64,000 bases of DNA, taken from positions 1-64,000 of IMG/VR virus record IMGVR_UViG_3300025536_000010; one strand, written 5' to 3'. Position 1 is the first letter of the stretch, and the number at the start of each line of letters is the position of its first letter. The notes under the pieces are model-generated. The model saw only the letters and a list, made by a program, of their open reading frames with translations. It did no database searches and was not told the DNA's origin. The position numbers and the translations under genes were made by a program. Shown here piece by piece: positions 14,301 to 61,811 of this stretch.

Positions 14301-16139
14301 AAGCTCACGGGTGCTGCTCCCGCTGCGCCCACGGACGCGCCTGCGGATGCGCACCTGGCGCCGTTGCCGGTCGCGCTAGCCGGTGCGGGTATTGGTTTGG
14401 GCGGTGCCGGTCTGGGCTATGGCCTGGGCAAGCTGATGGGTAAGAAAAAGGAGGAACCCGAGAAGAGTGGGGCGGACGCTTTGCGGGAACTATCGCTGAG
14501 CCCGGCAGCCGTGGGCTTCTTCGACTACTGCGACCGTTTGGGCCTCGACGCGACCCAGGTCAAACAGGCTGTCGACGTGGCGTGTGCCAAGTTCCCCGAA
14601 GCGGAAGGAGAACTGCGTCATGGCCTCGCCAAGCGAGCCCAGGCGCAGGTGCCCTTTTGCCTGGAGAAACAGGCGAACAAGTTGCGTGGGATGCTGAACG
14701 CCGGCAAGAGCGCCTGGGGCTGGATGCGCGGGGCCAAGCCCGTCATGGCGCAGGGCCTCCAGACCGCTCCGGTGACCAGGGCGACAGCTTCACCATTGGT
14801 GCAGCAGGCGGCGCAACTGCGGCAGGCGACGCCTGGCCTGGGCGTACAGCAGGCGATGGCGCAGGCGCGCTCGCAGCAGCCTGGCATGCAGGGCGTCTTC
14901 AATAACTACATGCGCGGTGCCACGCCCTACTCGGTGGCTTCGTCGGTCGGCCAAACGGCGATGGGTGGCCTCGGCGGTGCTTTCGCTGGCGAAGAACTGG
15001 GCCTACCTGGCGGTGGTTGGACTGGGGCCGCAGCTGGTGCGTTGGCCATGAACCCGATGGCCCGGCGCTTCATGGCCAGGAACCCCAGGAGCCTGGCTCA
15101 GCCCTTCATGCGGGGCGGGCAAGGAGCCATCGGCGGCGGTTTCGCCGGCAGCGCGATCGACCAGACAGCGGGTGCTCTGGGTTACGACACCAACGGGCGT
15201 TTCGCTCAGGCCGGTGCCGGGTTCGGTTTGCTTGCTGGCGGCGGACGCGGCCTCGCAGCCATGCGTGTCGCTCGCCACGGTGCGTTCTTGCCGGGCGTGA
15301 TGGCGCAGGCGTCCAAGATGTCGGGACCAGCGCGTGCGGACTTCTTGGCCAAGAACATGAGCATGGCGGGCCAGGTCAACTCGCTGGGCGCCAAGGCTAC
15401 GCAGGGCCTGGAGCAGTTCGCGCGTGGTTCAATGGCTCCCCTCACGGGCGTCGGCAAGACGGGCTGGAACCTGATGACGGGGGCCAAGAACCCGTTCAGC
15501 AGTGCCTGGAAGGGTGCGGTTCCGGGCACTCGTCTGGGACGCATTGGCGCTACCGTGGGCGGCGTTGGCATGGGCGCCACGGCGCTGGGCATGGGCTCGG
15601 AGTACCTCCATAACCGATTCAGCAACGCGGTCGATGAAAAGCTGGGCGACGTCTACAACCAGGCCATGCCGCAATTCCAGGATGATGCGGCGGGCTTCCT
15701 CGACCAGTACATGCAGAGTCGGGGTCTGATGAACGAGCAGGGCCAGTTCGATCCCATGCAGACGGTCAACCGCAACGGCGGCATCATGGGCAGCATGATG
15801 CAGGGCAGCGACAAGATCTTCCAGGGCCTGGGCATGGACCCGAGTCGCATGAGCCCCATGCAGAAGATGATGATTATGGGCGGCGCACTCGGCCTGGGCG
15901 GCGGGGCAATGGGCGGTTCGCCGGGCGTGGCAGGCGCAGGCGGCCTTGCCATGATGGGCGGGCTTCTGCCTACACTGATGCAGGGTCAGGGGCAGGGCGG
16001 ACAACGCTATTCGGGCTACAACCCGATGCAGCAGCAGTCGGCCCCTGGTTACGAAGGCCAGGCGCCTGGACAGAACCCGAACTCCCCACAGGCCCGCAAC
16101 GAATGGCTGCACCAGCAACAACTCCAGCAGGGAGGTTAA
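11343..16139 (+). CDS. Giant (1598 aa) Gly/Pro/Met/Gln-rich putative virion/ejection polyprotein
   Basis: RBS GGAGG; Pro-rich region with DPMTGQP x2; repeated glycine-zipper segments; K-x-A motifs between blocks. Confidence 0.65.
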   Translation: MNPAAAPGPVINNINGGMAQQGRFSGMFGMHPGFNFMAATQHAQRNPNAAAHPTIPQQGMATAGGVQQALQKASFAARGDYLDDVLFELWEGQKRAEAQTAGSMAAGASATAPAGGQNGGQQPNRSTRGMMGGGYRGARGGGGQNHGVVGQTSGPQPLVGNVNPLGQMGNPMATAARQGMASLAPRPFGGTMAPQPLKMAMMVPGPGGMAPNPGATAPMPPPPGPPGMAAPGGGGPLPPPPPNGGAPIPGQPPVDPMTGQPMDPAAMGGGAPPGPIDPMTGQPVQAPMASPPAPPLPANPRPAQASPKDSQQAQREANMLRMLEQKQQSEASATPQDANDDIQAQSMALAKTAESPGMRMMRENHNRITLGVLGEDLRRKYGMGPFSKRASESDSFSDMNEDDTLGSPKAMSKGWQWRYMNKDVDEGLSQWLPRLFKSQHTPVSELLASPGKQGLLGGLGGLALGGAGGALGAQHLGANPVLGGLGGAGLGAILGGLSGYGSRRKKNDKLIDAMRFMPPGATLGEMDQLEAAKKAPKPDPIAGSAVQKLAFEKFAQALKQSMEVEQAVPLGLAGVGAGVGMFAGGAQGRDLAQRNMQAQLPGQIEAARLQHRNSMNQGLDKMYGRGLDNWAKRRAGILQERMAIGPDGNFKVPRPAGNEGWERMRDQHGQLAASGPQLRQGFNPQQAAAAKQKFLASGQAQQFIQQQRGAWQNQLGRMQSQAPGQVAAAGRRGMLRGGLAGGLGGLAVASAPMLMGMFGGKQAEDGSIYLEKQAKEVTYTDPKTGKQVTTDHEALGKKCAEMLYKTVDDGDTQLIHAAMLDHLLRLNKRSADAERDTNCPLCGMLHEFGLACSTKKAEQEDTSLKSPNRSASGESKGLTFAHRADDHATGPAAWQSIDRFLSKDVTVKTDPYKGKHGGTKKDTVNYKLAALSGVESGLLGLKGRLMQPGGWLDELMDAQRSPVQAGGSTFGTLPKLKPPDLKGLLGKLTGAAPAAPTDAPADAHLAPLPVALAGAGIGLGGAGLGYGLGKLMGKKKEEPEKSGADALRELSLSPAAVGFFDYCDRLGLDATQVKQAVDVACAKFPEAEGELRHGLAKRAQAQVPFCLEKQANKLRGMLNAGKSAWGWMRGAKPVMAQGLQTAPVTRATASPLVQQAAQLRQATPGLGVQQAMAQARSQQPGMQGVFNNYMRGATPYSVASSVGQTAMGGLGGAFAGEELGLPGGGWTGAAAGALAMNPMARRFMARNPRSLAQPFMRGGQGAIGGGFAGSAIDQTAGALGYDTNGRFAQAGAGFGLLAGGGRGLAAMRVARHGAFLPGVMAQASKMSGPARADFLAKNMSMAGQVNSLGAKATQGLEQFARGSMAPLTGVGKTGWNLMTGAKNPFSSAWKGAVPGTRLGRIGATVGGVGMGATALGMGSEYLHNRFSNAVDEKLGDVYNQAMPQFQDDAAGFLDQYMQSRGLMNEQGQFDPMQTVNRNGGIMGSMMQGSDKIFQGLGMDPSRMSPMQKMMIMGGALGLGGGAMGGSPGVAGAGGLAMMGGLLPTLMQGQGQGGQRYSGYNPMQQQSAPGYEGQAPGQNPNSPQARNEWLHQQQLQQGG
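12980..12998 (-). repeat. Dispersed motif copy inside CDS (reverse orientation)
   Basis: Reverse complement CTCAAAAGCCAGTTTTTGG. Confidence 0.6.
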
Positions 16140-37360: not shown

Positions 37361-37373
37361 CTGACACGTTCCA

Positions 37374-37625
37374 CGGTCGCCGGAGAGCATACGGAGACCG
37401 CGGGTGCCGCCAGACGAAAGTGCCTCACACTCGGCACCCGGGCAACGGGAGGGGCGGATAAACGCGGTTCCTGCGGTCTGGGCTCCTTCTGCCGTGCCGC
37501 ATCCAGAACCAACCCCGCTCCCGGACAGAGGACAGGAAGTCCGGTGAAGGGTCACGGAGGACGAGAGTCACCTACACCAAACCGGGTGAACCATGCACCC
37601 GGGGGCGGCTCAGAGCCTTGGTGCT
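37374..37625 (+). ncRNA. Candidate structured RNA rich in GGA motifs (CsrB/RsmZ-like sponge?)
   Basis: Nine GGA in 37382-37561; stems GGGTGCCG/CGGCACCC, CCGGAC/GTCCGG (loop AGAGGACAGGAA), GTC-ACGGAG-GAC, CCGGGTG/CACCCGG. Confidence 0.45.
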
Positions 37626-37626
37626 G

Positions 37627-37655
37627 TTGCCTAGCCCGCTTCAATACAGTATCGT
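37627..37655 (+). promoter_or_regulatory. Sigma70-like promoter upstream of groES
   Basis: TTGCCT-N17-TATCGT. Confidence 0.5.
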
Positions 37656-37678
37656 TCGCCCATGACGATCTACTTACC

Positions 37679-37710
37679 TTCGGTGAACCCGTACAACCGG
37701 GTTCACCGAA
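37679..37710. promoter_or_regulatory. Perfect 13-bp inverted repeat in groES leader
   Basis: TTCGGTGAACCCG-TACAAC-CGGGTTCACCGAA. Confidence 0.7.
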
Positions 37711-37739
37711 TTCATCCACACACCCTGGAGGCGATGCAC

Positions 37740-38141
37740 ATGGCGAAGACGGCTACGACCACGAAAAAGACCGAGGCCCCAACCAAGGCTCCCAAGAATG
37801 CCAAGGCCCTGGCCGAGGCCCTCAACAGCGAACACCCGCTGGCCCGCTGCCACCCGCGCGGCGACCGCGTGGTCATCCGCCGCGACCTGCCCAAGAAGCA
37901 GACCGAAGGCGGCATCCTGCTGCCGGACACAGTCGCCAACGCCAAACAGCAGACCGGCCTGGTCGTCCGCGTCGGCCCCGGCCCGCTAGTCAACGGCGCG
38001 CGTGTGCCGTTGGACTTGGAACCCGGCGACCGCGTCATCATCACCGGCTACGCCGGCCTGGAACTGCGTGACCAGAACACCCGCGAAGGCGACGAGTTCT
38101 GCATGCTCCGCGAAGAGGACGTGCTGGCCAAGCTGTCCTGA
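37740..38141 (+). CDS. groES: Co-chaperonin GroES with N-terminal extension
   Basis: HPRGDRVVI, TEGGILLPD, VVRVGPG, GDRVIITGYAG, LREEDVLAKL. Confidence 0.93.
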   Translation: MAKTATTTKKTEAPTKAPKNAKALAEALNSEHPLARCHPRGDRVVIRRDLPKKQTEGGILLPDTVANAKQQTGLVVRVGPGPLVNGARVPLDLEPGDRVIITGYAGLELRDQNTREGDEFCMLREEDVLAKLS

Positions 38142-50356: not shown

Positions 50357-51277
50357 ATGGCCGAACTACCGCTCGTCTCTTGCCTGTGCGCCAGCAGCCC
50401 CAAACGGTGGGCGCAGTTGCAGCGGGCCATCCTGGACTTCACCAGGCAGACCTACCCGAACAAGGAACTCATCATCGGCGTTGACCTGCGCACAGACTTC
50501 GCCGGCATGATCGAATTGTTCGTGGAAGACGCGCTGGCCAGCGTGCCGCCGACGCGCGTGCATGATGGCGAGCGGATCATCCGCGACCTGCCCTACCGGA
50601 TCAAAGTGTTCGGCCGCCCCAACAGTAACTCGCCGATGGACTGCCTGATCCAGGCGCTCTGTCACGCCCGCGGCGACATCGTTGCCCTTTGGGACGACGA
50701 TAACCTCAACCTGCCGAGCCGCTTGACGGATCAGGTGGTTCGGCAGCAACGGCACCAGGATACACTCACGGCGCTCTCGGAATGCCTGTACTACTTCCAC
50801 GAGAGCAAAGAGTTGTTCGTGGTGAACCACGAAAACCCGGAGGCCGAGGTCAGCGAGCGCATCGCTATCTCGTCGCTCATGAGCCCGCGCGACGCGCTGC
50901 CAGCGTTGGAGCCGCACTATCGAACCAACCCAGCGTTGCACTTGGTCAACGGCCTCCAGGCGCGCAACCGCAAACTGCTGGGCATCACCGGCAAGCCGTT
51001 TCACCACCTAGTCGGCGTGTCGGGCGACAACCTGCGCGGCTACAGCGACCATCGTAAAATCGCGCAGGGTCACTCGCGTTCGGCGGACTGGATCAATGAG
51101 CGCGCGGATGCGCTTGTTGAAGCGCTGAACCAGTATTACTGGGACGCGGACAAAGTGAACGTCGTGGGCGCGGATGCCCTGGCGTTTGAGTACACCCCCA
51201 AGCTACGACATTCCAAAGACCTCTACGAAATCGCTATCAAGGACGCCGAAGCCGAAGAGGTCGTCAGAGAGGATTGA
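50357..51277 (+). CDS. Glycosyltransferase family 2
   Basis: PLVSCL, QTYPNKELII, ARGDIVALWDDD...RL..Q. Confidence 0.8.
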   Translation: MAELPLVSCLCASSPKRWAQLQRAILDFTRQTYPNKELIIGVDLRTDFAGMIELFVEDALASVPPTRVHDGERIIRDLPYRIKVFGRPNSNSPMDCLIQALCHARGDIVALWDDDNLNLPSRLTDQVVRQQRHQDTLTALSECLYYFHESKELFVVNHENPEAEVSERIAISSLMSPRDALPALEPHYRTNPALHLVNGLQARNRKLLGITGKPFHHLVGVSGDNLRGYSDHRKIAQGHSRSADWINERADALVEALNQYYWDADKVNVVGADALAFEYTPKLRHSKDLYEIAIKDAEAEEVVRED

Positions 51278-51312
51278 CCATGCCAATGATCGCTGTCCAA
51301 GGAGGGACACGA

Positions 51313-51525
51313 ATGAGCGCTCCCACCAATCTGAGCGAGCGCGAGCGGGACGTCCTGCACGGTATCGTGGAGGACAAAACCTACCGAGAGATCGCGGCCG
51401 GCATGGGCGTCTCTACCGAGACGGTGAAAACCTATGCCAACCGCCTCCGGCGCAAGCTCGGCATCAACAGCAAGACGGGGCTGGCTTTGTGGGCCGCCTC
51501 ACACCTAGACGCCTATGGGTTTTGA
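51313..51525 (+). CDS. Stand-alone LuxR-type HTH regulator
   Basis: LSERERDVL..TYREIA..MGVSTETVKTY..RLRRKLG. Confidence 0.9.
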   Translation: MSAPTNLSERERDVLHGIVEDKTYREIAAGMGVSTETVKTYANRLRRKLGINSKTGLALWAASHLDAYGF

Positions 51526-52080: not shown

Positions 52081-53985
52081 ATGCGGGACGGTTTCTGGAG
52101 GAGGTTACTCATGCCCTGGCAATCGGAAGCGGACTTCGTCAAAACTGCTGGGCAGTCTGGCCACGCCGGGCTGCCCAACAAACACATCCACGTCGACACG
52201 GCCAAACAGCCCTCCGTCTCCGAACAGACGGAGGGTCAGCTGTACTCCGACATCGTCGCCAAGTTAATCGACGTCGAGCCGCGCATGTGCTGCCCTAACT
52301 GCGGCGCACGCGCACACGACATCAAAGACGGTGGCCAGGTTTACACCCGCGACATCTTGGAGTCGGGCGGGAAAACACACAAGGGCGACATCCCCAAGTG
52401 TCCGATCCCCGGCCTGGACATCCCGACGATGGCATACACGGTTAGTCCGTGCGGCTGCCGCGTAAGCGTGGAATGGGCCGGGGCGTTCGCGGCCGAACTC
52501 CAGAGCCGCCTGGGTGGCAGTAAACCGGCCCCCATCATCGGCGTCACGCCCAAACAGCGTGAGTTCAAACTGAACAAGCTGGAGGCGGACCTGGCGAGGC
52601 TCTACGCTCTCCAAGACAAAGCAACCGGCGCGCAGAAAGAGGCCGTCGACTACTGGATCGTGGTCGTCGCTGACCAGATCCAGCGGCTCTGTCCCGGCAA
52701 ACACAACCAGCAACCGTTGCCGAAGAAACTGGAGCCCGAAGTGATCCAGTGGGCCGTCAAAAACGCGCACAGTCAGCCGACCGCGCAGGTCACGACGACG
52801 CCCTACTACCCGTTGTTGGCAAGCCAGGGCGGTGCGCTACCGGCGGGTACGCCGCTTTACCAGAGCGCGAGCGGAGCCATGAGCACCGTACCTGTTTACA
52901 GCGGACAAAAACCAGCCGGACACTACGCAGTGCCCGGCCACCCGAACCCTACGGAGCAAACCGACGAGCATCCGAACTGGTCGGCTTGGGGTTACCCGCC
53001 AGGCTACAAGATGCCCAAGAACCTTGGGGTCGCCGCGCGCGTGGCGCAGGACAAGCTGGCAAACACCACGGCGAATCAGGCGGACGCACTGGCCCTGGCG
53101 ATACAGATGACGCAAGCTGGCATAATGAGTGCCACCAGCGTCGGCAAACTGGTCGGCGTCGACCTCGGCAAGGAGAAAACACAGTTCGTGAAGGGTAACG
53201 TCGGCAAAGTCCACAGCGTCAACGTCTACGTTATCCACGGTGAGTACGTCGTGCGGATCGAGACGGAGGCGTTCGAGCCCGTCGAGCGCAAGTTTGGCTC
53301 CCTGGCTGCGTGCATTGCCTACGCCAAACAGCTGAACGACAACCGACACACCAATCCTATCCTGGGTGCGGTGGCTGAGTTGCTATCGCGGCGTTTGAGC
53401 GAGATCCAAAACGCCCAGAAGGCGGCCAACCTGACGAACACGTCGGGTGTACCGCCGTTCAAGACGACCAAATTCACGCCGTCGCCGAACAAGGTCGTCC
53501 TGCACGGAGCCAACGCCGAAGAAACGTCGGTCTATGCGAAAGCAGCGTCGTCGCTGGACGAGATGCTCGGTGCGCTGGGCGTCCCGACCATCGTGCCGGG
53601 ACAGCCGGCGGCGACTCAATACACACCGGCCGACGTCAAGAAGATCCTGAGCTACTTCACCACGCACCAGGGCACCATCTACGGCGTCGTTAGTCAGTAC
53701 CTGCTACCGGCCGGCAGCGCTACGCCGACACTCACGTTGCTGGAGACGGTCGACGAGATCGCTAACAACTTGCGGCAGCACACCGAGAAAGGTATGTCCC
53801 TATCGGCGCTGTCCAAGCAGTTCCTTACGGCCTGGCGGCAGGCAATCGAGATCGGGAAGAAACTCCTCCCCGACGTCCAGGAGGTTGATGCGCCCGCGCC
53901 TACCACAACGCCGGCCCCGCAGCGGGTCGACGTCCGCGGGAAGCGGAAGCGGCGGACTATCCGCCAGATCGAGGATAACGAATGA
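52081..53985 (+). CDS. Large hypothetical protein with N-terminal Cys cluster
   Basis: RBS GGAGG; CCPNC..SPCGC. Confidence 0.7.
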   Translation: MRDGFWRRLLMPWQSEADFVKTAGQSGHAGLPNKHIHVDTAKQPSVSEQTEGQLYSDIVAKLIDVEPRMCCPNCGARAHDIKDGGQVYTRDILESGGKTHKGDIPKCPIPGLDIPTMAYTVSPCGCRVSVEWAGAFAAELQSRLGGSKPAPIIGVTPKQREFKLNKLEADLARLYALQDKATGAQKEAVDYWIVVVADQIQRLCPGKHNQQPLPKKLEPEVIQWAVKNAHSQPTAQVTTTPYYPLLASQGGALPAGTPLYQSASGAMSTVPVYSGQKPAGHYAVPGHPNPTEQTDEHPNWSAWGYPPGYKMPKNLGVAARVAQDKLANTTANQADALALAIQMTQAGIMSATSVGKLVGVDLGKEKTQFVKGNVGKVHSVNVYVIHGEYVVRIETEAFEPVERKFGSLAACIAYAKQLNDNRHTNPILGAVAELLSRRLSEIQNAQKAANLTNTSGVPPFKTTKFTPSPNKVVLHGANAEETSVYAKAASSLDEMLGALGVPTIVPGQPAATQYTPADVKKILSYFTTHQGTIYGVVSQYLLPAGSATPTLTLLETVDEIANNLRQHTEKGMSLSALSKQFLTAWRQAIEIGKKLLPDVQEVDAPAPTTTPAPQRVDVRGKRKRRTIRQIEDNE

Positions 53986-54854
53986 TCGAGAAACTCATTA
54001 TCGGAGCCCCGTTCGGGAACTATCTGCACTTCGCCTACACCACGCCGACCCTGGGCACTTACACCAGTTACTACCGGGGCGGCTTCTGGAAGCGCGTGTG
54101 GCGCGTGCTGACGACGGTGCGCTACTATCCAGGCATCCAAGCCTGGAAAAACAAACTGGGCCTGCCTAACCCCAGCATCCGGCGGCTGACCGAACTGTGT
54201 GGGCCGCCGGCGCACAGCCATATCAGGGCGACCACGCCGCCCAAGCTGATCGTCAAGGACAAGATCGTTTCGGTCACCGGACACAACGACGTACAGTGGG
54301 AGACAGTGATCGTCACGGCGGCTGACGCCAAACCAGCCATGATTGAGATGAACGTGGGCTGCCCCAACTGCCCAGGCGACGACGCTACGCAGGATTATCC
54401 CAAGGTGTTCGCCTGGGCGTCGGAATACTGTTTTCGCAAACAGGTGCCGCTCTGTCTCAAACTGCCGCCGGTCAGCTTCATGCGGATCGTCCGGCAGGCC
54501 GTCGACGGCGGCATTTGCCGCTTCCACTGCTGCAACACGTTACCCACGCCTGGCGGTGGGATGTCGGGCAAGCCGCTCAAGCCCCTGGCCCTCCAGGCGA
54601 GCGAGTATGTACGGAACTACTGCTACGCCCGCAGCTACGCCCTGGACATGCTGATTGGCGGCGGCGGGGTCACACACGCCCAGGACGCGCAGGACTTCCT
54701 CGGCGTGGGCTGTACCAACGTGGCCGTGGCCTCCGTTTTGTTCAACCCGCTCAACTGGCCGCGGGTCCGCCGGATCGCTCACGACCTCTACCTGCGAGAC
54801 GCCCCGCCGCCGCAACCGGCACCGGCGGTCAAGGACGTCGAGCAGCTGCTTTGA
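53982..54854 (+). CDS. pyrD: Dihydroorotate dehydrogenase (class 1-like)
   Basis: NKLGLPNP, EMNVGCPN (catalytic Cys loop), LKLPP, NTL, GGMSG, IGGGGV. Confidence 0.85.
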   Translation: MIEKLIIGAPFGNYLHFAYTTPTLGTYTSYYRGGFWKRVWRVLTTVRYYPGIQAWKNKLGLPNPSIRRLTELCGPPAHSHIRATTPPKLIVKDKIVSVTGHNDVQWETVIVTAADAKPAMIEMNVGCPNCPGDDATQDYPKVFAWASEYCFRKQVPLCLKLPPVSFMRIVRQAVDGGICRFHCCNTLPTPGGGMSGKPLKPLALQASEYVRNYCYARSYALDMLIGGGGVTHAQDAQDFLGVGCTNVAVASVLFNPLNWPRVRRIAHDLYLRDAPPPQPAPAVKDVEQLL

Positions 54855-54889
54855 CTTTGTGAATCTTTCAGGAAACACTCGACGGCGGC

Positions 54890-54918
54890 TAGGCAAAGCC
54901 GCGTTGCGGTGCTACAGT
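54890..54918 (+). promoter_or_regulatory. Extended -10 promoter
   Basis: TAGGCA-N17-TACAGT with TG at the extended position. Confidence 0.5.
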
Positions 54919-54935
54919 GTTAGTAGACCACCGCG

Positions 54936-55005
54936 CATCCTCCGGGGATGGAGGAGCACCGTCGAGGCCGGGCTGCACCAGGACGCAGCCCGGCTTCGTT
55001 CTTTT
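54936..55005 (+). promoter_or_regulatory. Leader/sRNA with two GGA-loop hairpins; the second is terminator-like
   Basis: TCCTCC-GGGGAT-GGAGGA; GAGGCCGGGCTGC-ACCAGGAC-GCAGCCCGGCTTC then GTTCTTTT. Confidence 0.55.
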
Positions 55006-55014
55006 GAGGGGGCC

Positions 55015-55284
55015 ATGCCGCCACTACGAAAACGGAAGTCGAAGATCACAGCCCCGGCAGTGGTCTACTTCACCCAGGCCAAGAACGAGGCGGGCAAGAA
55101 ACAGCTATGCTGCTTCGCTGAGTGCGTCTACGGCGGCACCCGCGTCGGCCCCATCTGGTCCCACACCTCTGCTTCTGTGCGCCGTGCCCTGGCCACGCTC
55201 ACACAGCGCTGCGACTGCGGGCGCAAGTTTCACAAGCACCGTTTCACAGAAGGTCGGCGCGTATTGCGCGACGACGGTTCGTGA
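55015..55284 (+). CDS. Basic Cys/His hypothetical protein
   Basis: RBS GAGGGG; CDCGRKFHKH. Confidence 0.65.
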   Translation: MPPLRKRKSKITAPAVVYFTQAKNEAGKKQLCCFAECVYGGTRVGPIWSHTSASVRRALATLTQRCDCGRKFHKHRFTEGRRVLRDDGS

Positions 55285-55290
55285 TCCGTA

Positions 55291-55320
55291 TAGACCCCCA
55301 GTTCGTAGCCCAGGTACAAT
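55291..55320 (+). promoter_or_regulatory. Sigma70-like promoter directly before structured RNA
   Basis: TAGACC-N18-TACAAT. Confidence 0.45.
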
Positions 55321-55326
55321 GCCGCT

Positions 55327-55549
55327 GTTGACTAACCGGGGCCTGCCGCTGGCGTCGGCCGGTAACGGACAGCAGCTGTTGGTCGCAAGATGTGACTGGC
55401 AGCTGGGAACGGCCCCGTGGCGAAAAGCCGGGGGCCAGGAGGAAATACCAGGCGGCACGCCACCTAGCCGCCCGGTGCCCAAACCCGCAACGGGAGAGGA
55501 TCGGTGCCCCGGCACAATGGGGAAGCTGGGGAGGCCGCGGTTAGTCGAC
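55327..55549 (+). ncRNA. Candidate multibranch structured ncRNA (about 223 nt)
   Basis: 17-nt closing stem 55327-43/55533-49; 14-bp hairpin 55373-86/55392-405 with several G-U pairs; GGCCCC/GGGGCC; GGCGGC/GCCGCC. Confidence 0.65.
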
Positions 55550-55574
55550 CCTTTCAACCACCACGGAGGGTGTC

Positions 55575-55898
55575 ATGCCTGCAATCCTCATCGACCGCTT
55601 CATTCGGCACCTGGGCTACGTCCCGAAATCTGAGATGGACGACGCCCTGGTCGGCCGAGACAAGATCGAGCGAGAACTGCGCCACAGCAAGCGCGACCTC
55701 CAAAACCAACTGTACCTGCGGGACCGACTGGAAAAAGAGGTCGGGTTCTTGCGCGAACTCGAACTGGCCAGGGTGCGCAACAACACGGCGACCCAGCAGG
55801 CCGTGGCGCGCTTGGACGCGGCGACGGACAAACTCGAAGAACTGATGGAGAATACCTGGCCGGCGGCGAACCTCGCCGCGCTTCCCGAACTCGGGTGA
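55575..55898 (+). CDS. Coiled-coil hypothetical protein
   Basis: RBS GGAGGG. Confidence 0.65.
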   Translation: MPAILIDRFIRHLGYVPKSEMDDALVGRDKIERELRHSKRDLQNQLYLRDRLEKEVGFLRELELARVRNNTATQQAVARLDAATDKLEELMENTWPAANLAALPELG

Positions 55899-55944
55899 TC
55901 GCCCGCGTCGAACGAACAACCATCGACGGCTCACGGAGGAGCGC

Positions 55945-56397
55945 ATGACGACCAAGAAAGGGGAGTCCCCTGAAAATCTGCTCATGATTGTCGGGCAACT
56001 GCTGGAGGCCACCAAAGCAGCATCGGACGGCTTGAAAAGTCTTAGCCTTGAAGTGCGCAACAACGCCAGCGCTATCATCAGCGCCGCAAAGACTTTGGAG
56101 TTTGTCGAAAAGACGATCAGCGAACTGAACGCCGTGGTGCGGGCTAACGCGGATTCGTTGGTGTCCCAAACGGCCGAGAACGCTGCGGCTATCGAGGACT
56201 TGCAGACGGGTAAAGCGGAACTCGACAAGGCGGTTGACGAGCTACAACAGATGGTCGACACCTTGGGCGTCGACCGCGTAAAAGCGGACCACTCCCGCGA
56301 CCTCGTCTGGAAGATCATCTACGGCGCCGCCTGGGCCATCACCACCGGCATTGCCGTCTACGCCGCCCTGGGACAGTGGGCGGCCATCAAGCCGTGA
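55945..56397 (+). CDS. Coiled-coil protein with C-terminal TM helix
   Basis: Heptad pattern followed by IIYGAAWAITTGIAVYAALG. Confidence 0.7.
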   Translation: MTTKKGESPENLLMIVGQLLEATKAASDGLKSLSLEVRNNASAIISAAKTLEFVEKTISELNAVVRANADSLVSQTAENAAAIEDLQTGKAELDKAVDELQQMVDTLGVDRVKADHSRDLVWKIIYGAAWAITTGIAVYAALGQWAAIKP

Positions 56398-56404
56398 GGT
56401 AATC

Positions 56405-56959
56405 ATGTCGATCCTGGCCACACACGATGGCCCTCCCCCGTGGGCGAGGGCCATGTTCACCTTGGGGCAAGAGAAAGCCGCGGCAGTCGCGGACCCGCCC
56501 CAGGTGTCTTACGACCTTGCCGGCCAGTTGTTCCTGGCGGCCAACGGTTGGCTGCTCCTGTCCGTGCCGAACGCTTTCGTTCACGGCCTCTATGCTACCA
56601 TCGACGAGCGCGGCGTAGAGTTACCGCCAGGCAAAGACGGCGGGCCGATGAACGCGCACATCAGTGTGATGAAACCGAAAGAGATTGAGCTACTCGGCGG
56701 GGCCGACAAGATCAGCGAGCGCGGCAAGCAGTTCCACTATACGATCAGCCGCCTGTACACAGTCGAGCCGTCAGGCTGGCCGGAGATGAGCAAAGTCTGG
56801 TTTGTGCGCGTTCACTCGCCAGAGTTGCAGGAGTTGCGGAGGAGTTACGGGTTGTCGTCCCTACCCAACGACGGGAAGCATGACTTCCATATTAGCGTCG
56901 CCGTCAGAAGGAGGGGCGTCTTGGGTAGGAACGACAACCGTAAAGGCGAGGCAGCTTAG
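56405..56959 (+). CDS. 2H phosphoesterase-family protein
   Basis: Two HxS motifs (AHISV, FHISV) about 76 aa apart. Confidence 0.7.
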   Translation: MSILATHDGPPPWARAMFTLGQEKAAAVADPPQVSYDLAGQLFLAANGWLLLSVPNAFVHGLYATIDERGVELPPGKDGGPMNAHISVMKPKEIELLGGADKISERGKQFHYTISRLYTVEPSGWPEMSKVWFVRVHSPELQELRRSYGLSSLPNDGKHDFHISVAVRRRGVLGRNDNRKGEAA

Positions 56960-57159
56960 GTTAGTTGTGCAGCAGGGGTGGTTGGCGCGGTTGGTTGGTT
57001 CGCCTGGAGCTTCGCCAGGACTTCCTCCCGGTGAACGGGCACCTTCCGGGGGGCTTCGATGCCGAGGCGGACTTTGCCGCCGTCGATGTCGACAACCGTG
57101 AGGGTGATGTCGTCTCCGATGACGATCTTTTCACCTAACTTGCGAGAGAGTACCAACAT
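56956..57159 (-). CDS. csrA: Carbon storage regulator CsrA/RsmA
   Basis: MLVLSRKLGEKIVIGDDITLTVVDIDGGKVRLGIEAPRKVPVHREE; RBS AAAGGAG on minus strand. Confidence 0.96.
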   Translation of the reverse strand: MLVLSRKLGEKIVIGDDITLTVVDIDGGKVRLGIEAPRKVPVHREEVLAKLQANQPTAPTTPAAQLT

Positions 57160-57210
57160 GTTAGACTCCTTTCACGTCGAAGTGAGCCCTCCAATGACCA
57201 GCAACGCATA

Positions 57211-57226
57211 AGGGTAAGGATACCCT
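57211..57226 (+). promoter_or_regulatory. AGGA-loop hairpin (CsrA-site-like) in leader of the 57260 gene
   Basis: AGGGTA-AGGA-TACCCT, then SD AAGGAG at 57244. Confidence 0.6.
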
Positions 57227-57259
57227 CTTTTGGGGGACAAAGCAAGGAGATTTAGAAAC

Positions 57260-58453
57260 ATGCTAGACTTCGCTGTCCCCACCCTGACCCGCTACGACAC
57301 CATCGTCGCAGCGCTAGCCGGGCTTGAGAAGCTGGCGCTCACCGCCTCACAGCTTACCCGCGAAGCCGCCAAAGTCGACCCCAATCCGACTGACGCCCAG
57401 AAGGAGAGCGGCAACTACCGCAAAGGCCACGTCGCCTGGAAGGGTCTGAACATCACTATCGAGACGGCGGCTGGTCAGGTCCGCCGCGGGGTGGGCAAGG
57501 ATGGCAAGCCGTGGCAGACCAAGATGAGGGACCACTATGGCTATGTTAAAGGTACTGTCTCCGACGCAGACGGAGATCATGTCGACGTGTTCATTAGTTG
57601 CGACCAGCAGCCCGATACCAGGGGGCCGCAGCGAGCCCAACCGGGGTGGGGATGGCTTCGCTCGGAACTCGTCCACGTTATCAACCAGGTCGACCCCGAT
57701 ACCGGCAAGTTCGACGAGCACAAGGTTGTGCTGGGCTGCCTGGATGAAGAGTCTGCGCGCCAATCTTACCTGCGCAACTATGAACCGGGGTGGCAAGGAC
57801 TTGGGTCGGTCACTGCCCTCACCCTGCCGCAGTTCAAATGGTGGCTCGACCGCGCCGACACGTCTAAGGAAATCAAAGAAGGGTTTTTTGCAGCACCGGC
57901 GAATCGTAAGAAATCAGCGACCGACCTGATCCAAAAAACGGCTTTTGACGCCACTGCCACACACATCCTGGTCGTCAAGCGCGCCGAGGACCGCGAAACG
58001 CCTTTCACCGTCGCTGTTGATCTGGACGGCACCCTGGCCGAAAAAGAGGAACCGTTCGACCCAACCTCTATCGGTACGCCGCGCCAGAAAGCCATTGACT
58101 ACGTTCGTCTCTTCCGCGAAGCGGGGGCACGGATTATCATCTTCACGGTTCGCGGCGACAAAGAGTTGGTGGAGGCGTGGCTGGAGGAACACGACGTTCC
58201 CTACGATTACGTCAACGAGAACCCGGACCAGCCCGAAGACGCTTCGGGTAAGGTCATCGCCGACGCTTACTGGGACGACAAGGCGTTCAACGCCGAAGAC
58301 CCGGATGAGTTCGGACCCACGATCCTGCGGAAGGTCATGGGAGGCAAGGACGAGGCGCACGCTGCGCCTGCGCTCCACATCACAGTGGTCAAGAACACGA
58401 CGTTCGTGTTCTCGGCCCCGGAGTTACTGGATGCCATGAAGGAGGCCGCATGA
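57260..58453 (+). CDS. Phage inorganic-pyrophosphatase-like (InPase) domain fused to HAD phosphatase
   Basis: PTDAQKESGNYRKGH..HYGY..DGDHVDVF..FDEHKVVLG; then VDLDGTLA, IFTVR, KVIADAYWDDKA. Confidence 0.8.
   Translation: MLDFAVPTLTRYDTIVAALAGLEKLALTASQLTREAAKVDPNPTDAQKESGNYRKGHVAWKGLNITIETAAGQVRRGVGKDGKPWQTKMRDHYGYVKGTVSDADGDHVDVFISCDQQPDTRGPQRAQPGWGWLRSELVHVINQVDPDTGKFDEHKVVLGCLDEESARQSYLRNYEPGWQGLGSVTALTLPQFKWWLDRADTSKEIKEGFFAAPANRKKSATDLIQKTAFDATATHILVVKRAEDRETPFTVAVDLDGTLAEKEEPFDPTSIGTPRQKAIDYVRLFREAGARIIIFTVRGDKELVEAWLEEHDVPYDYVNENPDQPEDASGKVIADAYWDDKAFNAEDPDEFGPTILRKVMGGKDEAHAAPALHITVVKNTTFVFSAPELLDAMKEAA
57931..57949 (-). repeat. Dispersed motif copy inside CDS (reverse orientation)
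   Basis: Reverse complement GTCAAAAGCCGTTTTTTGG. Confidence 0.6.
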
Positions 58454-59363: not shown

Positions 59364-59444
59364 TGATGCTGGTGGTCCTGTAACCGCGGGGCATGGTCGC
59401 ATCCGCGGCGTTAGACGGTGTTCTACATCCCAATGGAGGTTGCC

Positions 59445-61811
59445 ATGCAAGATGGCGCTTCGACGGTAACTGCTGCGCGCGCAGCGAATCAGACGTTCTC
59501 TCGTAACGGCTCCAAGCCGTACACACCCGAGGAGTTGTCGGGCGAGTGGACGTGCAAGAAGAGGGACGGCAAGGTCGTCCCGTTCGACCCCAGGAAGATC
59601 CGCCAAGCACTGCGGAAGTGCTTTGCGTCCCTGGGTGAGGCGGTCGAACAGCACACTGACAAGCACGACGAAGTCATCGAGAAGATTACGACGTCGGTCT
59701 GTAACATCCTCGCGGCCCAGAAGAAAAACTGCCCCGATGTCGAGGCAGTGCAGCAGCTGGTGATTCAGCAGCTGTGGGTCGAGGGCATGTTCCAGTACGC
59801 CGAGCATTATCAGAACTACCGCGAGGAGCGGCGCAAGGCTCGGCTGCACAAGCCCATCCCGGAAGAAGTCGTCCAGCGCGTGCTGGCCGACCAGAAGCAT
59901 TTCCCCACCGACCTCCAGTATTACCAGTTCATGGGGAAGTTCTCGCGTTGGCGCGAGGCCGAAAAGCGCCGCGAGACGTGGCACGAGACGGTTCACGAGC
60001 GCGTCATGCCCTGGTTCCAGCGGCTGCCGCTGGTGCAGGGTAAGCTGACCGCAGCCGAGTGGGCCGAACTCACAGACGCCATGTATAAGCTGGAGGCGTC
60101 GCCCGCGATGCGGGTGGTGCAGATGGCCGGGCCGGCGCTGGACCGCTGTCATGTCGGGGTCTACAACTGCGCCTACCAGCCGATTGAAGACCTTTTCTCT
60201 TTCCCGGAACTGCTCTACATCCTCATGCAGGGCACCGGGGCTGGCTTCTCGGTCGAGTCCGACTATGTCGGCGAACTACCGCGCATCAAAAAGCAGCGCG
60301 GCAAACCGGCGGAAACCATCGTCGTACCCGACAGCACCGAGGGCTGGTGCAACTCCTACTTCAAAGGCATCGAACGCTGGTGGGACGGCTACGACGTCCA
60401 CTACGATGTCAGCGGTGTGCGCAGGCAGGGTAGCCGGCTCAAAACCAAAGGCGGGCGTGCCAGCGGACCAGGGCCGTTTCTGGAACTGATGGCGTTCACA
60501 CGCAACATCGTCATGGCACGCCAGGGACGCTACCTGGAAGACACGGACGCGCACCGTCTGGCCTGTTTCACCGGCCGCATTGTTCAGGTTGGCGGCGTGC
60601 GGCGGGCCGCTACCATCTCCATCTCCGACCTGCTGTCGCTGGGCATGCGCCACATCAAAGGCGGCAACTGGTACAACGACACGACCTACTGGACGGACGG
60701 CAAGTACCTCACGATGGCCAACAACTCGGCCTGCTACGAGGCACGCCCGCCCATCGACGTGTTCATGCGCGAGTTCCTGGCCCTGGTCGAATCCAAATCG
60801 GGCGAGCGCGGCATCTTCAACCGACAGGCCATCATCGAGACGCGACCGGCGCGGCGGAAGAAAGCCAAGTTCGGCATGAACCCGTGCGCCGAGATCGTGT
60901 TGCGGCCGTACGAGTTCTGCAACTTGACCATCGTCATCGCCCGCGCGGACGACACGGTCGAGAGCTTGAAGCGGAAGGTGCGCATCGCCACGATCTTCGG
61001 CCTCATGCAGTCGACCTGCACCGACTTCAAATACATCCGCCCGAAATGGAAGGAGAACTGCGAGGACGAGCGGCTGCTCGGCGTCGACATTACCGGCCAC
61101 GCCGACTGCCCGCTGCTGCGCTACGGCGCGGCAGGGCGAGCCGACCTGTTGCGCTTGCTCAAGAAAGTCGTCCACGACACGAAAGCCGAGTACGCCCCAC
61201 GGTTCGGGATCAACCTGTCGGCGGCTGACACCTGCGTCAAGCCTGGCGGCGACTCGGGCGTGTTTTTCGACTGCGCCTCGGGTATCAGCGCACGGTTCTC
61301 GGACTTCCAGCTGCGCTGGGTGCGCGAGTCTAAGGACAGCCCGATCGCGCATTTCCTAATGGACTCGGGCGTGCCTTGGGCACCGGCGCCGGAAGCCCCG
61401 AACGAACTGCTCGTTTTCGGTTTCCCCAAGAAGTCGCCGTTCGGGTCGACAACGCGGAACCAGCTGAACGCCATCGAGCAGCTGGAGAACTGGTTTGAGT
61501 GGAAGCGCGAGTGGGCTGAGCACTCGGTCAGCTGCACCATTTACGTCGAGGACCATGAGTGGCTCCAGGTCGGGGCCTGGTTGTACGACATCGAGCACTG
61601 GAAGTACCTCAGCGGCCTCAGTTTCCTGCCCAAGGACAATGGCGTGTACACTTACGCGCCCAACGAGGAGTTGACCAGCGAGCGGTACGAGGAGGCCAAG
61701 GCGGCCTTTCCCGAATTGAACTGGTCAAAACTCCAGCACTACGAAGAGGAGGACAACACAGGGGCGGCGCAGACATTTGCCTGCACCGGCGATCTGTGTG
61801 AGCGTGTCTGA
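59445..61811 (+). CDS. nrdJ: Class II ribonucleotide reductase with N-terminal ATP-cone
   Basis: KKRDGKVVPFD..KI (ATP-cone), YNCAY, VGGVRRAA, NPCAE catalytic motif, FCNL, TCVKP, C-terminal CTGDLC. Confidence 0.92.
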   Translation: MQDGASTVTAARAANQTFSRNGSKPYTPEELSGEWTCKKRDGKVVPFDPRKIRQALRKCFASLGEAVEQHTDKHDEVIEKITTSVCNILAAQKKNCPDVEAVQQLVIQQLWVEGMFQYAEHYQNYREERRKARLHKPIPEEVVQRVLADQKHFPTDLQYYQFMGKFSRWREAEKRRETWHETVHERVMPWFQRLPLVQGKLTAAEWAELTDAMYKLEASPAMRVVQMAGPALDRCHVGVYNCAYQPIEDLFSFPELLYILMQGTGAGFSVESDYVGELPRIKKQRGKPAETIVVPDSTEGWCNSYFKGIERWWDGYDVHYDVSGVRRQGSRLKTKGGRASGPGPFLELMAFTRNIVMARQGRYLEDTDAHRLACFTGRIVQVGGVRRAATISISDLLSLGMRHIKGGNWYNDTTYWTDGKYLTMANNSACYEARPPIDVFMREFLALVESKSGERGIFNRQAIIETRPARRKKAKFGMNPCAEIVLRPYEFCNLTIVIARADDTVESLKRKVRIATIFGLMQSTCTDFKYIRPKWKENCEDERLLGVDITGHADCPLLRYGAAGRADLLRLLKKVVHDTKAEYAPRFGINLSAADTCVKPGGDSGVFFDCASGISARFSDFQLRWVRESKDSPIAHFLMDSGVPWAPAPEAPNELLVFGFPKKSPFGSTTRNQLNAIEQLENWFEWKREWAEHSVSCTIYVEDHEWLQVGAWLYDIEHWKYLSGLSFLPKDNGVYTYAPNEELTSERYEEAKAAFPELNWSKLQHYEEEDNTGAAQTFACTGDLCERV

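What the first reader, a model, noticed from the sequence alone, without database searches (positions are those of the whole stretch)
56956..57260. Phage-encoded Csr circuit: csrA, a cognate-looking target next door, and candidate sponge RNAs
Seen: csrA is the only minus-strand gene in 64 kb and keeps the RNA-binding N-terminal strand and HRE motif. The divergent gene's leader carries a perfect AGGGTA-AGGA-TACCCT hairpin 17 nt upstream of an AAGGAG SD. GGA-loop RNAs occur at 37374, 54936 and 55327. Established: CsrA dimers repress translation by bridging a loop GGA and an SD GGA, and are released by GGA-rich sRNAs. Phage csrA genes are known, but I know of no described phage-encoded regulator-target-sponge set. 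Inference: a post-transcriptional timer for late or virion-cargo genes.
Basis: partly seen in the sequence, partly recalled or inferred. Interest (0 to 1): 0.8.

Follow-up and report, generated by a model that had tools for sequence, protein, structure and literature searches.

The report
Jumbo-phage csrA with GGA-motif RNAs
A giant phage carries its own copy of the bacterial RNA-binding regulator CsrA; the "target hairpin" next to it is best read as part of the csrA promoter, but two conserved RNAs about 2 kb upstream display the GGA motif that CsrA recognises and are plausible partners, still untested.

Summary
csrA (56956-57159, minus strand) is real: Pfam scores 90 bits, the RNA-binding residues are intact, and it is the only supported minus-strand gene.

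The flagged hairpin (57211-57226) exists as described, but three results argue against it as a CsrA target:
- GGA-loop hairpins occur at shuffle frequency in the window (8 against 7.2±2.7).
- Its 5' arm is absent from all 12 syntenic relatives.
- Its AGGA loop is the complement of the -10 box (TATCCT) of a sigma70-type csrA promoter. That promoter is conserved in 13/13 loci and positioned relative to csrA, not to the InPase-HAD gene.

So the "cognate target next door" is not supported.

The three "sponge" candidates differ:
- **37374:** no support.
- **54938-54998:** a GGA-loop hairpin followed by a terminator hairpin whose loop also holds GGA. About 12/15 and 11/15 relatives keep these GGAs while stems and flanks vary.
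- **55327-55549:** a structured leader RNA of about 225 nt with 17 members, strong covariation and no Rfam match. It has 4-5 positionally conserved unpaired GGAs, though the window's copy lacks the apical one.

The structured RNA falls short of sponge-like GGA density and the hairpin pair has only two loop sites.

Best reading: a conserved jumbo-phage module with an independently transcribed csrA and GGA-presenting RNAs that may bind CsrA. Binding is untested.

The parts
56956..57159 (-). csrA, 67 aa. It converges on the 2H-SAK gene and overlaps its 3' end by 4 nt.
   Evidence: Pfam CsrA 90.4 bits. PHROG 9500 'CsrA-like regulator'. PDB RsmE/CsrA E 2e-16. 12 syntenic orthologues keep M1 L2 V3 L4 R6 K7 and V42 R44 E46.
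57217..57245 (-). Sigma70-type csrA promoter. The -35 TTGCTT is the complement of 57240-57245, the spacer is 17 nt, and the -10 TATCCT is the complement of 57217-57222. The inferred transcription start is about 57208-57210.
   Evidence: The homologous -35 TTGnnn / 17-18 nt / -10 TAnnnT pair is the best-scoring promoter-like site upstream of csrA in 12 of 13 loci and second best in the window. It ends 48-60 nt before the csrA ATG (32 in L136). The block keeps its distance to csrA, not to the InPase start. It falls below the consensus scanner's threshold, so the support is comparative only.
57160..57210 (-). Inferred csrA 5' leader, with GGA in the SD (57169-57167) and a second GGA 23 nt upstream (57192-57190).
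   Evidence: 10 of 13 csrA leaders hold >=2 GGA. 7 of 13 have one 13-28 nt upstream of the SD GGA, within a similar UGGAnGGCUC context in the window, L130 and L137. Autoregulation is an inference.
57211..57226 (+). The flagged perfect hairpin AGGGTA-AGGA-TACCCT. It is palindromic, so it is present on both strands.
   Evidence: Sequence. -6.4 kcal/mol, pair probability about 0.77 in the intergenic context. The 5' arm is absent in all relatives. The loop is the complement of the csrA -10 box.
57223..57239 (+). Conserved GC hairpin (CCCTC-TTTT-GGGGG) plus ACA, lying in the spacer of the csrA promoter. Its function is unexplained.
   Evidence: CCC(n)-loop-GGG(G)ACA is present in 13/13 loci. There is no other good copy in the window.
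57260..58453 (+). InPase (PF18823) plus a HAD/PNKP-like phosphatase gene, with SD AAGGAG at 57244-57249.
   Evidence: Pfam. PHROG hits fall on segments of polyvalent/DarB-like proteins. Orthologues lie next to csrA in 12 loci.
56405..56959 (+). 2H-SAK phosphoesterase gene (the ORF is open from 56351; the start is placed by alignment with relatives).
   Evidence: Pfam PF22547. It sits tail to tail with csrA in every relative, including the distant L154, L158 and L206.
54938..54955 (+). Hairpin A: TCCTCCG-GGGA-TGGAGGA, with the loop GGA at 54946-54948.
   Evidence: The equivalent hairpin has GGA in, or abutting, its loop in about 12 of 15 relatives, with differing stems and loop flanks.
54963..55007 (+). 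Hairpin B: a 14-bp intrinsic-terminator stem with loop ACCAGGAC (GGA at 54981-54983), followed by a U tract.
   Evidence: Terminator scan. Fold z = -2.9. Covariation in 11 of 12 stem pairs, and GGA in the loop in 11 of 15 relatives. It is the only tandem GGA-loop hairpin pair with a U tail on the window's plus strand.
55015..55284 (+). Conserved small basic Cys-rich protein (89 aa), directly after the terminator.
   Evidence: Orthologues in 15 loci. No Pfam or PHROG hit.
55291..55320 (+). Promoter-like site TAGACC-18-TACAAT for the structured RNA.
   Evidence: A -10-like hexamer (TAGAAT, TATACT or TACAAT) sits at the same place in the relatives.
55327..55549 (+). Structured leader RNA with its core at 55344-55536.
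- Closing stem P1.
- Invariant P2.
- Variable P3 (loop AAGAU here).
- P4 with a GAAAA loop.
- P5 with an ACGCC loop.
- P7 with a UGGGGAA loop.

Unpaired GGAs lie at 55438-55443, 55493-55500, 55521-55523 and 55530-55532.
   Evidence: Alignments. Model R1 scores 152.7 bits. 95% of cells are paired and 23/30 pairs show compensatory change. P1 is supported against shuffles. GGA positional conservation. No Rfam match.
55575..56397 (+). Two genes downstream of the leader: a 107-aa protein (55575-55898) and a 150-aa coiled-coil/membrane protein (55945-56397).
   Evidence: ORFs and synteny. No informative family hit.
37361..37661 (+). It is not supported as part of the system.
   Evidence: Fold z = -0.53. 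GGA at 3.0 per 100 nt. No relatives recovered.

Best explanation
The window is the first 64 kb of a 235-kb jumbo-phage contig.

**The module.** csrA belongs to a conserved module, in this order:
1. A GGA-loop hairpin followed by a GGA-loop terminator.
2. A small Cys-rich protein gene.
3. A promoter and a structured leader RNA of about 225 nt.
4. Two small genes.
5. The 2H-SAK phosphoesterase gene.
6. csrA on the opposite strand.
7. The InPase-HAD phosphatase gene.

**Shown.**
- csrA keeps the residues that bind RNA.
- It has a conserved sigma70-type promoter of its own on the minus strand, so it is an independent transcription unit that converges on the plus-strand operon.
- The flagged AGGA hairpin is a lineage-specific palindrome lying over the -10 box and start region of that promoter. 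It is not a conserved RNA operator of the InPase-HAD gene.
- The two upstream RNA elements are conserved across relatives with 40-60% protein identity. They keep GGA at fixed unpaired positions while the surrounding bases and the stems change.

**Inferred.**
- Phage CsrA (and/or host CsrA) binds these GGA sites and its own leader.
- This controls translation or termination of the small-protein gene and of the leader-driven operon, and limits csrA's own synthesis. E. coli CsrA works this way on multi-site leaders such as pgaA and on csrA itself.
- Phage CsrA very probably also acts on host mRNAs and on host Csr/Rsm sRNAs.
- The direction and timing of the regulation are unknown.
For: - **Identity of csrA:**
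- **Contig and synteny:**
- **Promoter:** TTG at -35 in 13/13, TA at -10 in 13/13, 17-18 nt spacer, constant distance to the csrA ATG.
- **Hairpin not conserved and at chance frequency:**
- **Tandem hairpin element:**
- **Structured RNA:** 17 members, strong covariation.
- **GGA enrichment in that RNA:** GGA is the top one of 64 trinucleotides for positional conservation in otherwise variable columns (4 clusters against <=2 for any other). There are 129 GGA against 82.7 expected from dinucleotide shuffles. P3 has an apical GGA in 16/17 members.
- **Second GGA in csrA leaders:**
- **Linkage:** the RNA was found only in loci that carry the 2H-SAK/csrA module, among about 160 csrA-bearing viral loci.
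Against: - No binding or transcript data exist. No RNA run holding this DNA was listed, so transcription starts, termination and read-through are inferred.
- The window's own P3 loop is AAGAU, without GGA.
- L141 keeps the RNA and the terminator GGA but has no csrA in the module; there 2H-SAK is fused to HAD.
- GGA density (4.1 per 100 nt in the RNA core; 4 in about 80 nt for the hairpin pair, only 2 of them in loops) is below that of the classical sponges as recalled (about 5-6 per 100 nt).
- Most invariant nucleotides of the structured RNA are not GGA, which points to another ligand or partner.
- GGA-rich stretches are also SD-like (AGGAGG), so ribosome binding or another protein could explain them.
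- The promoter hexamers are weak in the window itself (8 of 12) and fell below the scanner's threshold.
- The relatives share ancestry, so the counts are not independent.
Confidence: 0.55

Rival explanations
1. The AGGA hairpin at 57211-57226 and the AAGGAG SD form a two-site CsrA operator that represses the InPase-HAD gene. GGA-rich sRNAs at 37374, 54936 and 55327 titrate CsrA away, giving a post-transcriptional timer.
For: - The hairpin is perfect and presents A-AGGA-U, close to the known A(N)GGA loop motif.
- It lies 17 nt from a GGA-containing SD.
- Its ensemble pair probability is about 0.77.
- A second GGA (GGGGGACA, 57235-57237) upstream of the SD is conserved in most relatives.
Against: - The 5' arm is missing in all 12 relatives.
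- The frequency of such hairpins equals the shuffles.
- 40% of leaders have as many GGAs.
- The loop coincides with the csrA -10 box, and the conserved block tracks csrA rather than the InPase start.
- The hairpin is in an mRNA only if plus-strand transcription reads through antisense csrA.
- The candidate sRNAs are not GGA-dense.
- 37374 has no support.
Confidence: 0.1
2. There is no phage-internal circuit.
- csrA is a moron-like host-takeover gene that acts only on host mRNAs and host Csr/Rsm sRNAs, for example to dampen CRISPR-Cas or other defences or to reprogram metabolism.
- The conserved GGAs in the phage RNAs serve something else: SD-like ribosome standby sites, tertiary contacts, or binding of another factor such as the adjacent small basic Cys-rich protein.
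For: - Phage CsrA/RsmA homologues are widespread: 83 INPHARED records and >=451 IMG/VR stretches.
- They are proposed to manipulate host regulation, including CRISPR-Cas (PMC8450108). The plasmid homologue RsmQ does so (PMC9928087).
- csrA has its own promoter and the opposite orientation.
- The RNA persists in L141 without a neighbouring csrA.
- The invariant RNA modules are not GGA.
- The window's P3 lacks GGA.
Against: - GGA, and no other trinucleotide, is repeatedly kept at unpaired positions in three separate RNAs of the same module.
- The loop flanks vary while GGA stays.
- The RNA family was found only with this csrA-containing module.
Confidence: 0.3
3. The elements are ordinary. Hairpin B is just the terminator of the upstream operon, hairpin A is a stabilising 3'-UTR stem, and the 55327 RNA is a riboswitch-like or protein-binding leader unrelated to CsrA. 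GGA conservation would then reflect G-rich composition and shared descent.
For: - The RNAs are 37-44% G.
- In L139 the upstream gene ends 2 nt before hairpin A, which is compatible with a 3'-UTR element.
- The relatives are not independent.
Against: - Dinucleotide shuffles of each member give fewer GGAs in 16 of 17 members and as many in L139.
- GGA stands out among all 64 trinucleotides.
- 11 of 15 terminator loops hold GGA, although by my estimate from the base composition a 5-8 nt loop would hold it in roughly 10% of cases.
Confidence: 0.05

Closest known systems
Phage-, plasmid- and ICE-encoded CsrA/RsmA homologues (PHROG 9500/8397; Pseudomonas F116-like phage RsmM; plasmid pQBR103 RsmQ; Legionella ICE CsrT)
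   Same: - It is a small CsrA-family protein with intact RNA-binding residues, carried by a mobile element.
- It is about 53% identical to CsrA of F116-like phages over residues 1-51.
- The literature already records many phage csrA genes (PMC8450108, PMC7366521) and a fitness effect of knocking one down (PMC11879866).
   Different: - Here csrA sits in a fixed module of a jumbo-phage clade: tail to tail with a 2H-SAK gene, with a conserved promoter of its own, and linked to conserved GGA-presenting RNAs.
- The searched library turned up no description of a phage-encoded CsrA together with phage-encoded cognate RNAs.
Csr/Rsm sponge sRNAs (CsrB, CsrC, RsmX/Y/Z)
   Same: - GGA sits in hairpin loops and single-stranded linkers.
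- The 54938-55007 element ends in an intrinsic terminator, as these sRNAs do.
- The two loop GGAs lie 35 nt apart, within the spacing I recall for one CsrA dimer bridging two sites.
   Different: - No Rfam match.
- There are only two loop sites in the hairpin pair.
- The 55327 RNA has about 4 GGA per 100 nt, against about 5-6 recalled for the classical sponges.
- It has no terminator and runs into an ORF.
- It is dominated by conserved non-GGA helices and loops.
CsrA-controlled multi-site mRNA leaders (E. coli pgaA, glgC, cstA; csrA autoregulation), recalled from the literature and not tested here
   Same: - A long 5' leader (about 230 nt) carries several GGA sites, one of them at the SD of the first gene (CACGGAGG).
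- The csrA leader has an SD GGA plus an upstream GGA.
   Different: - The phage leader is a compact multi-helix RNA closed by a 17-20 bp stem and has invariant loops. The known CsrA leaders are not like this.
- The target genes are phage genes of unknown function.
Morons: independently transcribed accessory genes in phage genomes
   Same: The gene has its own promoter, lies opposite to the surrounding operon, and is an accessory regulator of bacterial origin.
   Different: - It is conserved at the same site across a diverged clade rather than scattered.
- No terminator of its own was identified; its transcript must end inside the antisense of the 2H-SAK gene.

Membership tests
CsrA/RsmA protein family (PF02599) | Profile match above the curated cut-off over the whole domain | tested here: met
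   90.4 bits against a cut-off of 27, residues 1-52 of 53. PHROG 9500 E 5e-22.
CsrA/RsmA protein family (PF02599) | RNA-binding residues of strand beta1 (L2, L4, R6, R/K7) and beta5 (V42, H43, R44, E46) | tested here: met
   The alignment to RsmE 2jpp and CsrA 1y00 shows MLVLSRK and VHREE. These are invariant in 12 orthologues, except H43D in L131 and L135.
CsrA/RsmA protein family (PF02599) | Homodimer that binds GGA-containing RNA | not testable with these tools
CsrA-repressed mRNA leader (claimed for the InPase-HAD gene) | A GGA overlapping the SD plus a second GGA in a hairpin loop about 10-60 nt upstream | tested here: met
   The window sequence has the AGGA loop at 57217-57220 and the SD GGA at 57246-57248. 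But 40% of leaders have >=3 GGA, and such hairpins occur at chance frequency.
CsrA-repressed mRNA leader (claimed for the InPase-HAD gene) | Conservation of the operator in orthologous leaders | tested here: not met
   The 5' arm and the loop GGA are absent in the relatives. The conserved block is positioned relative to csrA.
Csr/Rsm sponge sRNA | Match to a known family (CsrB, CsrC, RsmX, RsmY, RsmZ and others) | tested here: not met
   No Rfam hit at gathering score in the window, and none at E <= 5 in 54800-57300.
Csr/Rsm sponge sRNA | High density of unpaired GGA motifs (about 5-6 per 100 nt, many sites per molecule) | tested here: inconclusive
   The hairpin pair has 4 GGA in about 80 nt, but only 2 are in loops. 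The structured RNA core has 4.1 per 100 nt in the window and 2.1-5.5 among members, against a genome mean of 1.9. The enrichment over shuffles is 1.56-fold.
Csr/Rsm sponge sRNA | Stand-alone transcript with its own promoter and an intrinsic terminator | tested here: inconclusive
   54963-55007 is a strong terminator. The upstream promoter is weak in the window (8 of 12, my reading) but is TATAAT in L131 and L135. The 55327 RNA has a promoter-like site but no terminator.
Csr/Rsm sponge sRNA | Positional conservation of GGA while flanks vary | tested here: met
Sigma70-type promoter (for csrA) | -35 TTGACA-like and -10 TATAAT-like hexamers 16-18 nt apart, conserved at one place upstream of the gene | tested here: met
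   13/13 loci have TTGnnn, a 17-18 nt spacer and TAnnn(T/C); L133 has TTGACA-17-TATCCT. The window's copy scores 8 of 12, below the scanner's threshold. The transcription start is not mapped.
Structured non-coding RNA family (new, unnamed) | Conserved secondary structure supported by compensatory changes | tested here: met
   95.2% of cells are paired against 77.2% in shuffles. 23/30 pairs change on both sides. Slid controls give 25-49% (the alignment was fitted to the model). RNAalifold on plain MAFFT alignments gives 19/29 pairs.

The most novel reading that the evidence does not exclude
A clade of jumbo phages encodes a self-contained Csr-like module: its own CsrA plus two dedicated phage RNAs that present GGA. 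One is a terminated tandem-hairpin RNA or attenuator in front of a small Zn-ribbon-like protein gene. The other is a 225-nt structured leader of a previously undescribed RNA family.

Because csrA converges on the operon that this leader drives, CsrA repression of the leader and transcriptional interference with csrA could form a double-negative switch that times expression of the phosphoesterase/phosphatase genes.

This would be the first virus-encoded set of a regulator with its cognate RNAs.
Probability: 0.3. Interest if true: 0.8.

Novelty: new variant of a known kind. Interest (0 to 1): 0.6.

Why it matters
Phage csrA genes are known, but their targets are not; only one knock-down phenotype was found in the papers read (PMC11879866). 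This clade offers concrete, conserved, testable RNA partners next to the gene. It also offers a clear negative: the obvious-looking hairpin beside csrA is promoter DNA. If CsrA binds these RNAs, phages do more than borrow a host global regulator; they bring their own RNA wiring for it. Separately, the 225-nt RNA is a well-supported structured RNA family with no Rfam counterpart, found in uncultured jumbo phages.

Tried and rejected
- **Megablast against phage records:** 54000-60000 gave no match.
- **tRNA/tmRNA and Rfam scans:** nothing found.
- **RNA-seq evidence:** no RNA run was listed, only the probable source DNA run, whose contig is identical. Transcription starts therefore could not be mapped.
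- **Conserved block as a repeated phage promoter motif:** no other good copy in the window, so this was rejected.
- **Flagged hairpin as an intrinsic terminator:** the stem is weak, the T run is only 4, and the scanner does not call it, so this was rejected.
- **Sponge idea by GGA density:** the densest 120-nt windows are all in coding sequence.
- **A 17-mer of the RNA in IMG/VR:** it gave mostly chance hits. A two-block pattern found two more viral members and one contig binned in a Nannocystaceae MAG.
- **Model R1 over about 160 csrA-bearing viral loci:** it hit only loci carrying the 2H-SAK/csrA module, so the RNA is not a general companion of phage csrA.
- **csrA elsewhere on the L141 contig:** the search was inconclusive. 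The contig was not among the rows shown, and only 11 kb of it was read.
- **Relatives of the 37361-37661 region:** none recovered through the Cpn10-like gene.
- **Protein families:** Pfam and PHROGs gave nothing for the small Cys-rich protein or the 107-aa protein. An earlier Pfam query of the small protein used the wrong frame; the correct start is 55015.
Full report
**What the window is.**
- The InPase-HAD protein matches IMGVR_UViG_3300025536_000010 at 100% identity. This is a 234,886-bp contig, and the window's coordinates equal the contig's, so the window is its first 64 kb.
- G+C is about 62%.
- GC3-based ORF filtering shows plus-strand genes tiling the window. The only minus-strand ORF that is not a shadow of a plus-strand gene is 56956-57159. 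Ten other long minus-strand ORFs have no Pfam hit.
- The DNA is held by a subsurface-metagenome run. An independent assembly of that run is identical over 54800-57400 at about 25x depth.

**The gene.**
- 56956-57159 (-) encodes a 67-aa CsrA: Pfam 90.4 bits, PHROG 'CsrA-like regulator', and solved RsmE/CsrA structures at E 1e-16.
- The N-terminal MLVLSRK and the VHREE segment are kept.
- Phage csrA is not new. 83 phage records carry a homologue, at least 451 IMG/VR stretches do, and the literature describes them (PMC8450108, PMC7366521). One knock-down gave smaller plaques (PMC11879866).

**Synteny.**
- The order 2H-SAK phosphoesterase, then csrA on the opposite strand, then InPase-HAD recurs in L002, L033 and L130-L139. 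InPase-HAD identity in these loci is 38-59% and G+C is 50-70%.
- The tail-to-tail pairing of 2H-SAK and csrA also recurs in the more distant L154, L158 and L206.
- The 30 other InPase-containing viral loci and 78 metagenome loci have no csrA nearby.

**The flagged hairpin.**
- AGGGTA-AGGA-TACCCT is at 57211-57226, 17 nt from AAGGAG, with the ATG at 57260.
- It folds at -6.4 kcal/mol and overlaps a second hairpin, CCCTC-TTTT-GGGGG at 57223-57236, which folds at -6.7 kcal/mol. The minimum-energy fold of the leader uses the second hairpin, while the ensemble favours the first.
- As a class, such hairpins are not enriched: 8 against 7.2±2.7 shuffled.
- The InPase leader's three GGAs are matched or exceeded by 40% of leaders.
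- In the relatives the 5' arm is missing. What is conserved is the block ATACCC(n)-loop-GGGGGACA-nnn-CAAG.

**The conserved block is a csrA promoter.**
- Read on the minus strand, the block is -35 TTGnnn, a 17-18 nt spacer, and -10 TAnnnT.
- It is the best promoter-like pair upstream of csrA in 12 of 13 loci and the second best in the window.
- It ends 48-60 nt before the csrA ATG.
- In L131, L135 and L138 the InPase start is 60-75 nt further away, yet the block keeps its distance to csrA.
- I therefore read the hairpin as a lineage-specific palindrome over the csrA -10 and start region.
- The GC hairpin in the promoter spacer is conserved in 13/13 loci and remains unexplained. It may be an operator, or an element of a read-through plus-strand RNA.

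**The 'sponges'.** GGA density does not single out any of the three. The densest 120-nt windows are in coding sequence, and the candidates have about 3 per 100 nt against a mean of 1.9.

*37374.* It lies in a 300-nt gap before a Cpn10-like gene. It has no significant fold, and no relatives were recovered.

*54936.*
- It is a 7-bp hairpin with a GGGA loop (54938-54955). Eight nucleotides later comes a 14-bp terminator hairpin (54963-54998, loop ACCAGGAC) with a U tract. The start of a conserved 89-aa basic Cys-rich protein follows at 55015.
- The same layout stands before the orthologous gene in the relatives.
- GGA lies in, or abuts, the loop of the first hairpin in about 12 of 15 relatives. 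It lies in the terminator loop in 11 of 15. The loop flanks differ (CAGGAC, CUGGAC, CCGGAG, CAGGAA, UUGGAC, ACGGAC and others), and the stems covary at 11 of 12 pairs.
- A strict descriptor (two GGA-loop hairpins, a long second stem and a U tail) finds this one site on the window's plus strand and finds its homologues in the relatives.
- A promoter-like TAGGCA-17-TACAGT (54890-54918) is my own reading and is weak. L131 and L135 have TATAAT at the same place. In L139 the upstream gene ends 2 nt before the hairpin, so the element may also be a 3'-UTR end.

*55327.*
- It is the start of a conserved RNA that follows a -10-like hexamer (TACAAT here, TAGAAT or TATACT elsewhere).
- It has the following parts:
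  - a 17-20 bp closing stem that differs in sequence between members yet beats shuffles;
  - an invariant hairpin GCCGCnGGCGUCGGyCGGUAA;
  - a variable hairpin P3;
  - GUGGCGAAAAGCC;
  - a hairpin with an ACGCC loop;
  - a hairpin with an AUGGGGAAG loop.
- A covariance model finds 17 members, including weak ones at 24-66 bits.
- 95% of cells pair, 23 of 30 pairs show changes on both sides, and slid controls collapse.
- Rfam has no match.
- The RNA runs straight into the SD (CACGGAGG) of the gene at 55575, so it is a leader, not a terminated sRNA.
- GGA is the trinucleotide most often kept at fixed places in otherwise variable columns:

| Position | Members with GGA |
|---|---|
| P3 apex | 16/17 |
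| Linker after P4 | 15/17 |
| Linker before P7 | 13/17 |
| P7 loop | 15/17 |
| 3' side of P7 | 12/17 |

- GGA occurs 129 times against 82.7 expected from dinucleotide shuffles.
- Many P3 loops read CAGGAUG or UAGGAUG, close to the CsrA SELEX consensus as I recall it.
- The window's own P3 loop is AAGAU, without GGA.
- L141 keeps the RNA although its 2H-SAK is fused to HAD and there is no csrA there.
- Among about 160 csrA-bearing viral loci, the RNA occurs only with this module.

**The csrA leader.** From the inferred transcription start, 10 of 13 leaders have at least two GGAs. Seven of 13 have one 13-28 nt upstream of the SD GGA. This is compatible with autoregulation as known for E. coli csrA (from memory).

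**Conclusion.**
- The circuit idea survives in altered form. The conserved GGA-presenting RNAs are the hairpin-terminator pair at 54938-55007 and the structured leader at 55327-55549, plus the csrA leader itself. The InPase leader is not one of them.
- Binding, direction and timing remain inferences.
- The rival reading is that csrA serves only host takeover and the GGAs have another role. It stays substantial because of L141, the window's P3 loop and the many non-GGA invariants.

Noticed in passing
window 55327-55549 (core 55344-55536); also L002, L033, L130-L139, L141, L143, L154, L158, L206: A structured RNA family of about 225 nt with strong covariation and no Rfam match. So far it is confined to one clade of uncultured jumbo phages. 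Its invariant modules (GCCGCnGGCGUCGGyCGGUAA, GUGGCGAAAAGCC, an ACGCC loop, a UGGGGAA loop) suggest a ligand or partner beyond CsrA.
   Followed up: yes
window 57223-57239: A GC hairpin (CCCnC-loop-GGGGG) followed by ACA is conserved in 13/13 loci inside the spacer of the csrA promoter. A promoter spacer needs no such conservation. It may be an operator for a DNA-binding protein or an element of a read-through plus-strand RNA.
   Followed up: partly
L141 1408-3468 (minus strand): In a more distant relative (IMGVR_UViG_3300036768_001490) the 2H-SAK domain is fused directly to the HAD phosphatase, with no InPase domain and no csrA between them. So the csrA plus InPase insertion, or its loss, marks a domain-shuffling point.
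   Followed up: partly
window 55015-55284: A conserved 89-aa basic protein with a Cys pattern (CC...C...CxC) sits directly after the GGA-loop terminator. It has no Pfam or PHROG family and is a candidate nucleic-acid-binding partner of the neighbouring RNAs.
   Followed up: partly
window 51274-51525: An 83-aa LuxR/GerE-type HTH protein (like sigma70 region 4). Orthologues sit a few genes upstream of the module in L033, L133, L135, L136 and L138. It may regulate the module's promoters.
   Followed up: no
window 37361-38141: A Cpn10 (GroES)-like gene with an N-terminal extension of about 60 aa (37662-38141), preceded by a 300-nt non-coding gap. Only one weak viral relative was recovered.
   Followed up: partly
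window 59418-61811 and 53982-54854: A class II (B12-dependent-type) ribonucleotide reductase with an ATP cone, and a gene like dihydroorotate dehydrogenase, flank the module. These are auxiliary nucleotide-metabolism genes.
   Followed up: no
L143 (CAZVEM010000028.1): A 29-kb contig carrying the whole module (RNA, csrA) is binned in a MAG labelled uncultured Nannocystaceae, with 72% G+C. This is a weak hint that the clade's hosts are Myxococcota, but binning of a phage contig is not proof.
   Followed up: no
window 11343-16139: A 1598-aa ORF with no Pfam or PHROG hit. Most large ORFs tested in the window have none either.
   Followed up: no
window 56956-56959: The csrA and 2H-SAK genes overlap by 4 nt at their stop codons. 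The csrA transcript must therefore end inside the antisense of 2H-SAK, and any plus-strand read-through is antisense to csrA, giving scope for transcriptional interference.
   Followed up: no
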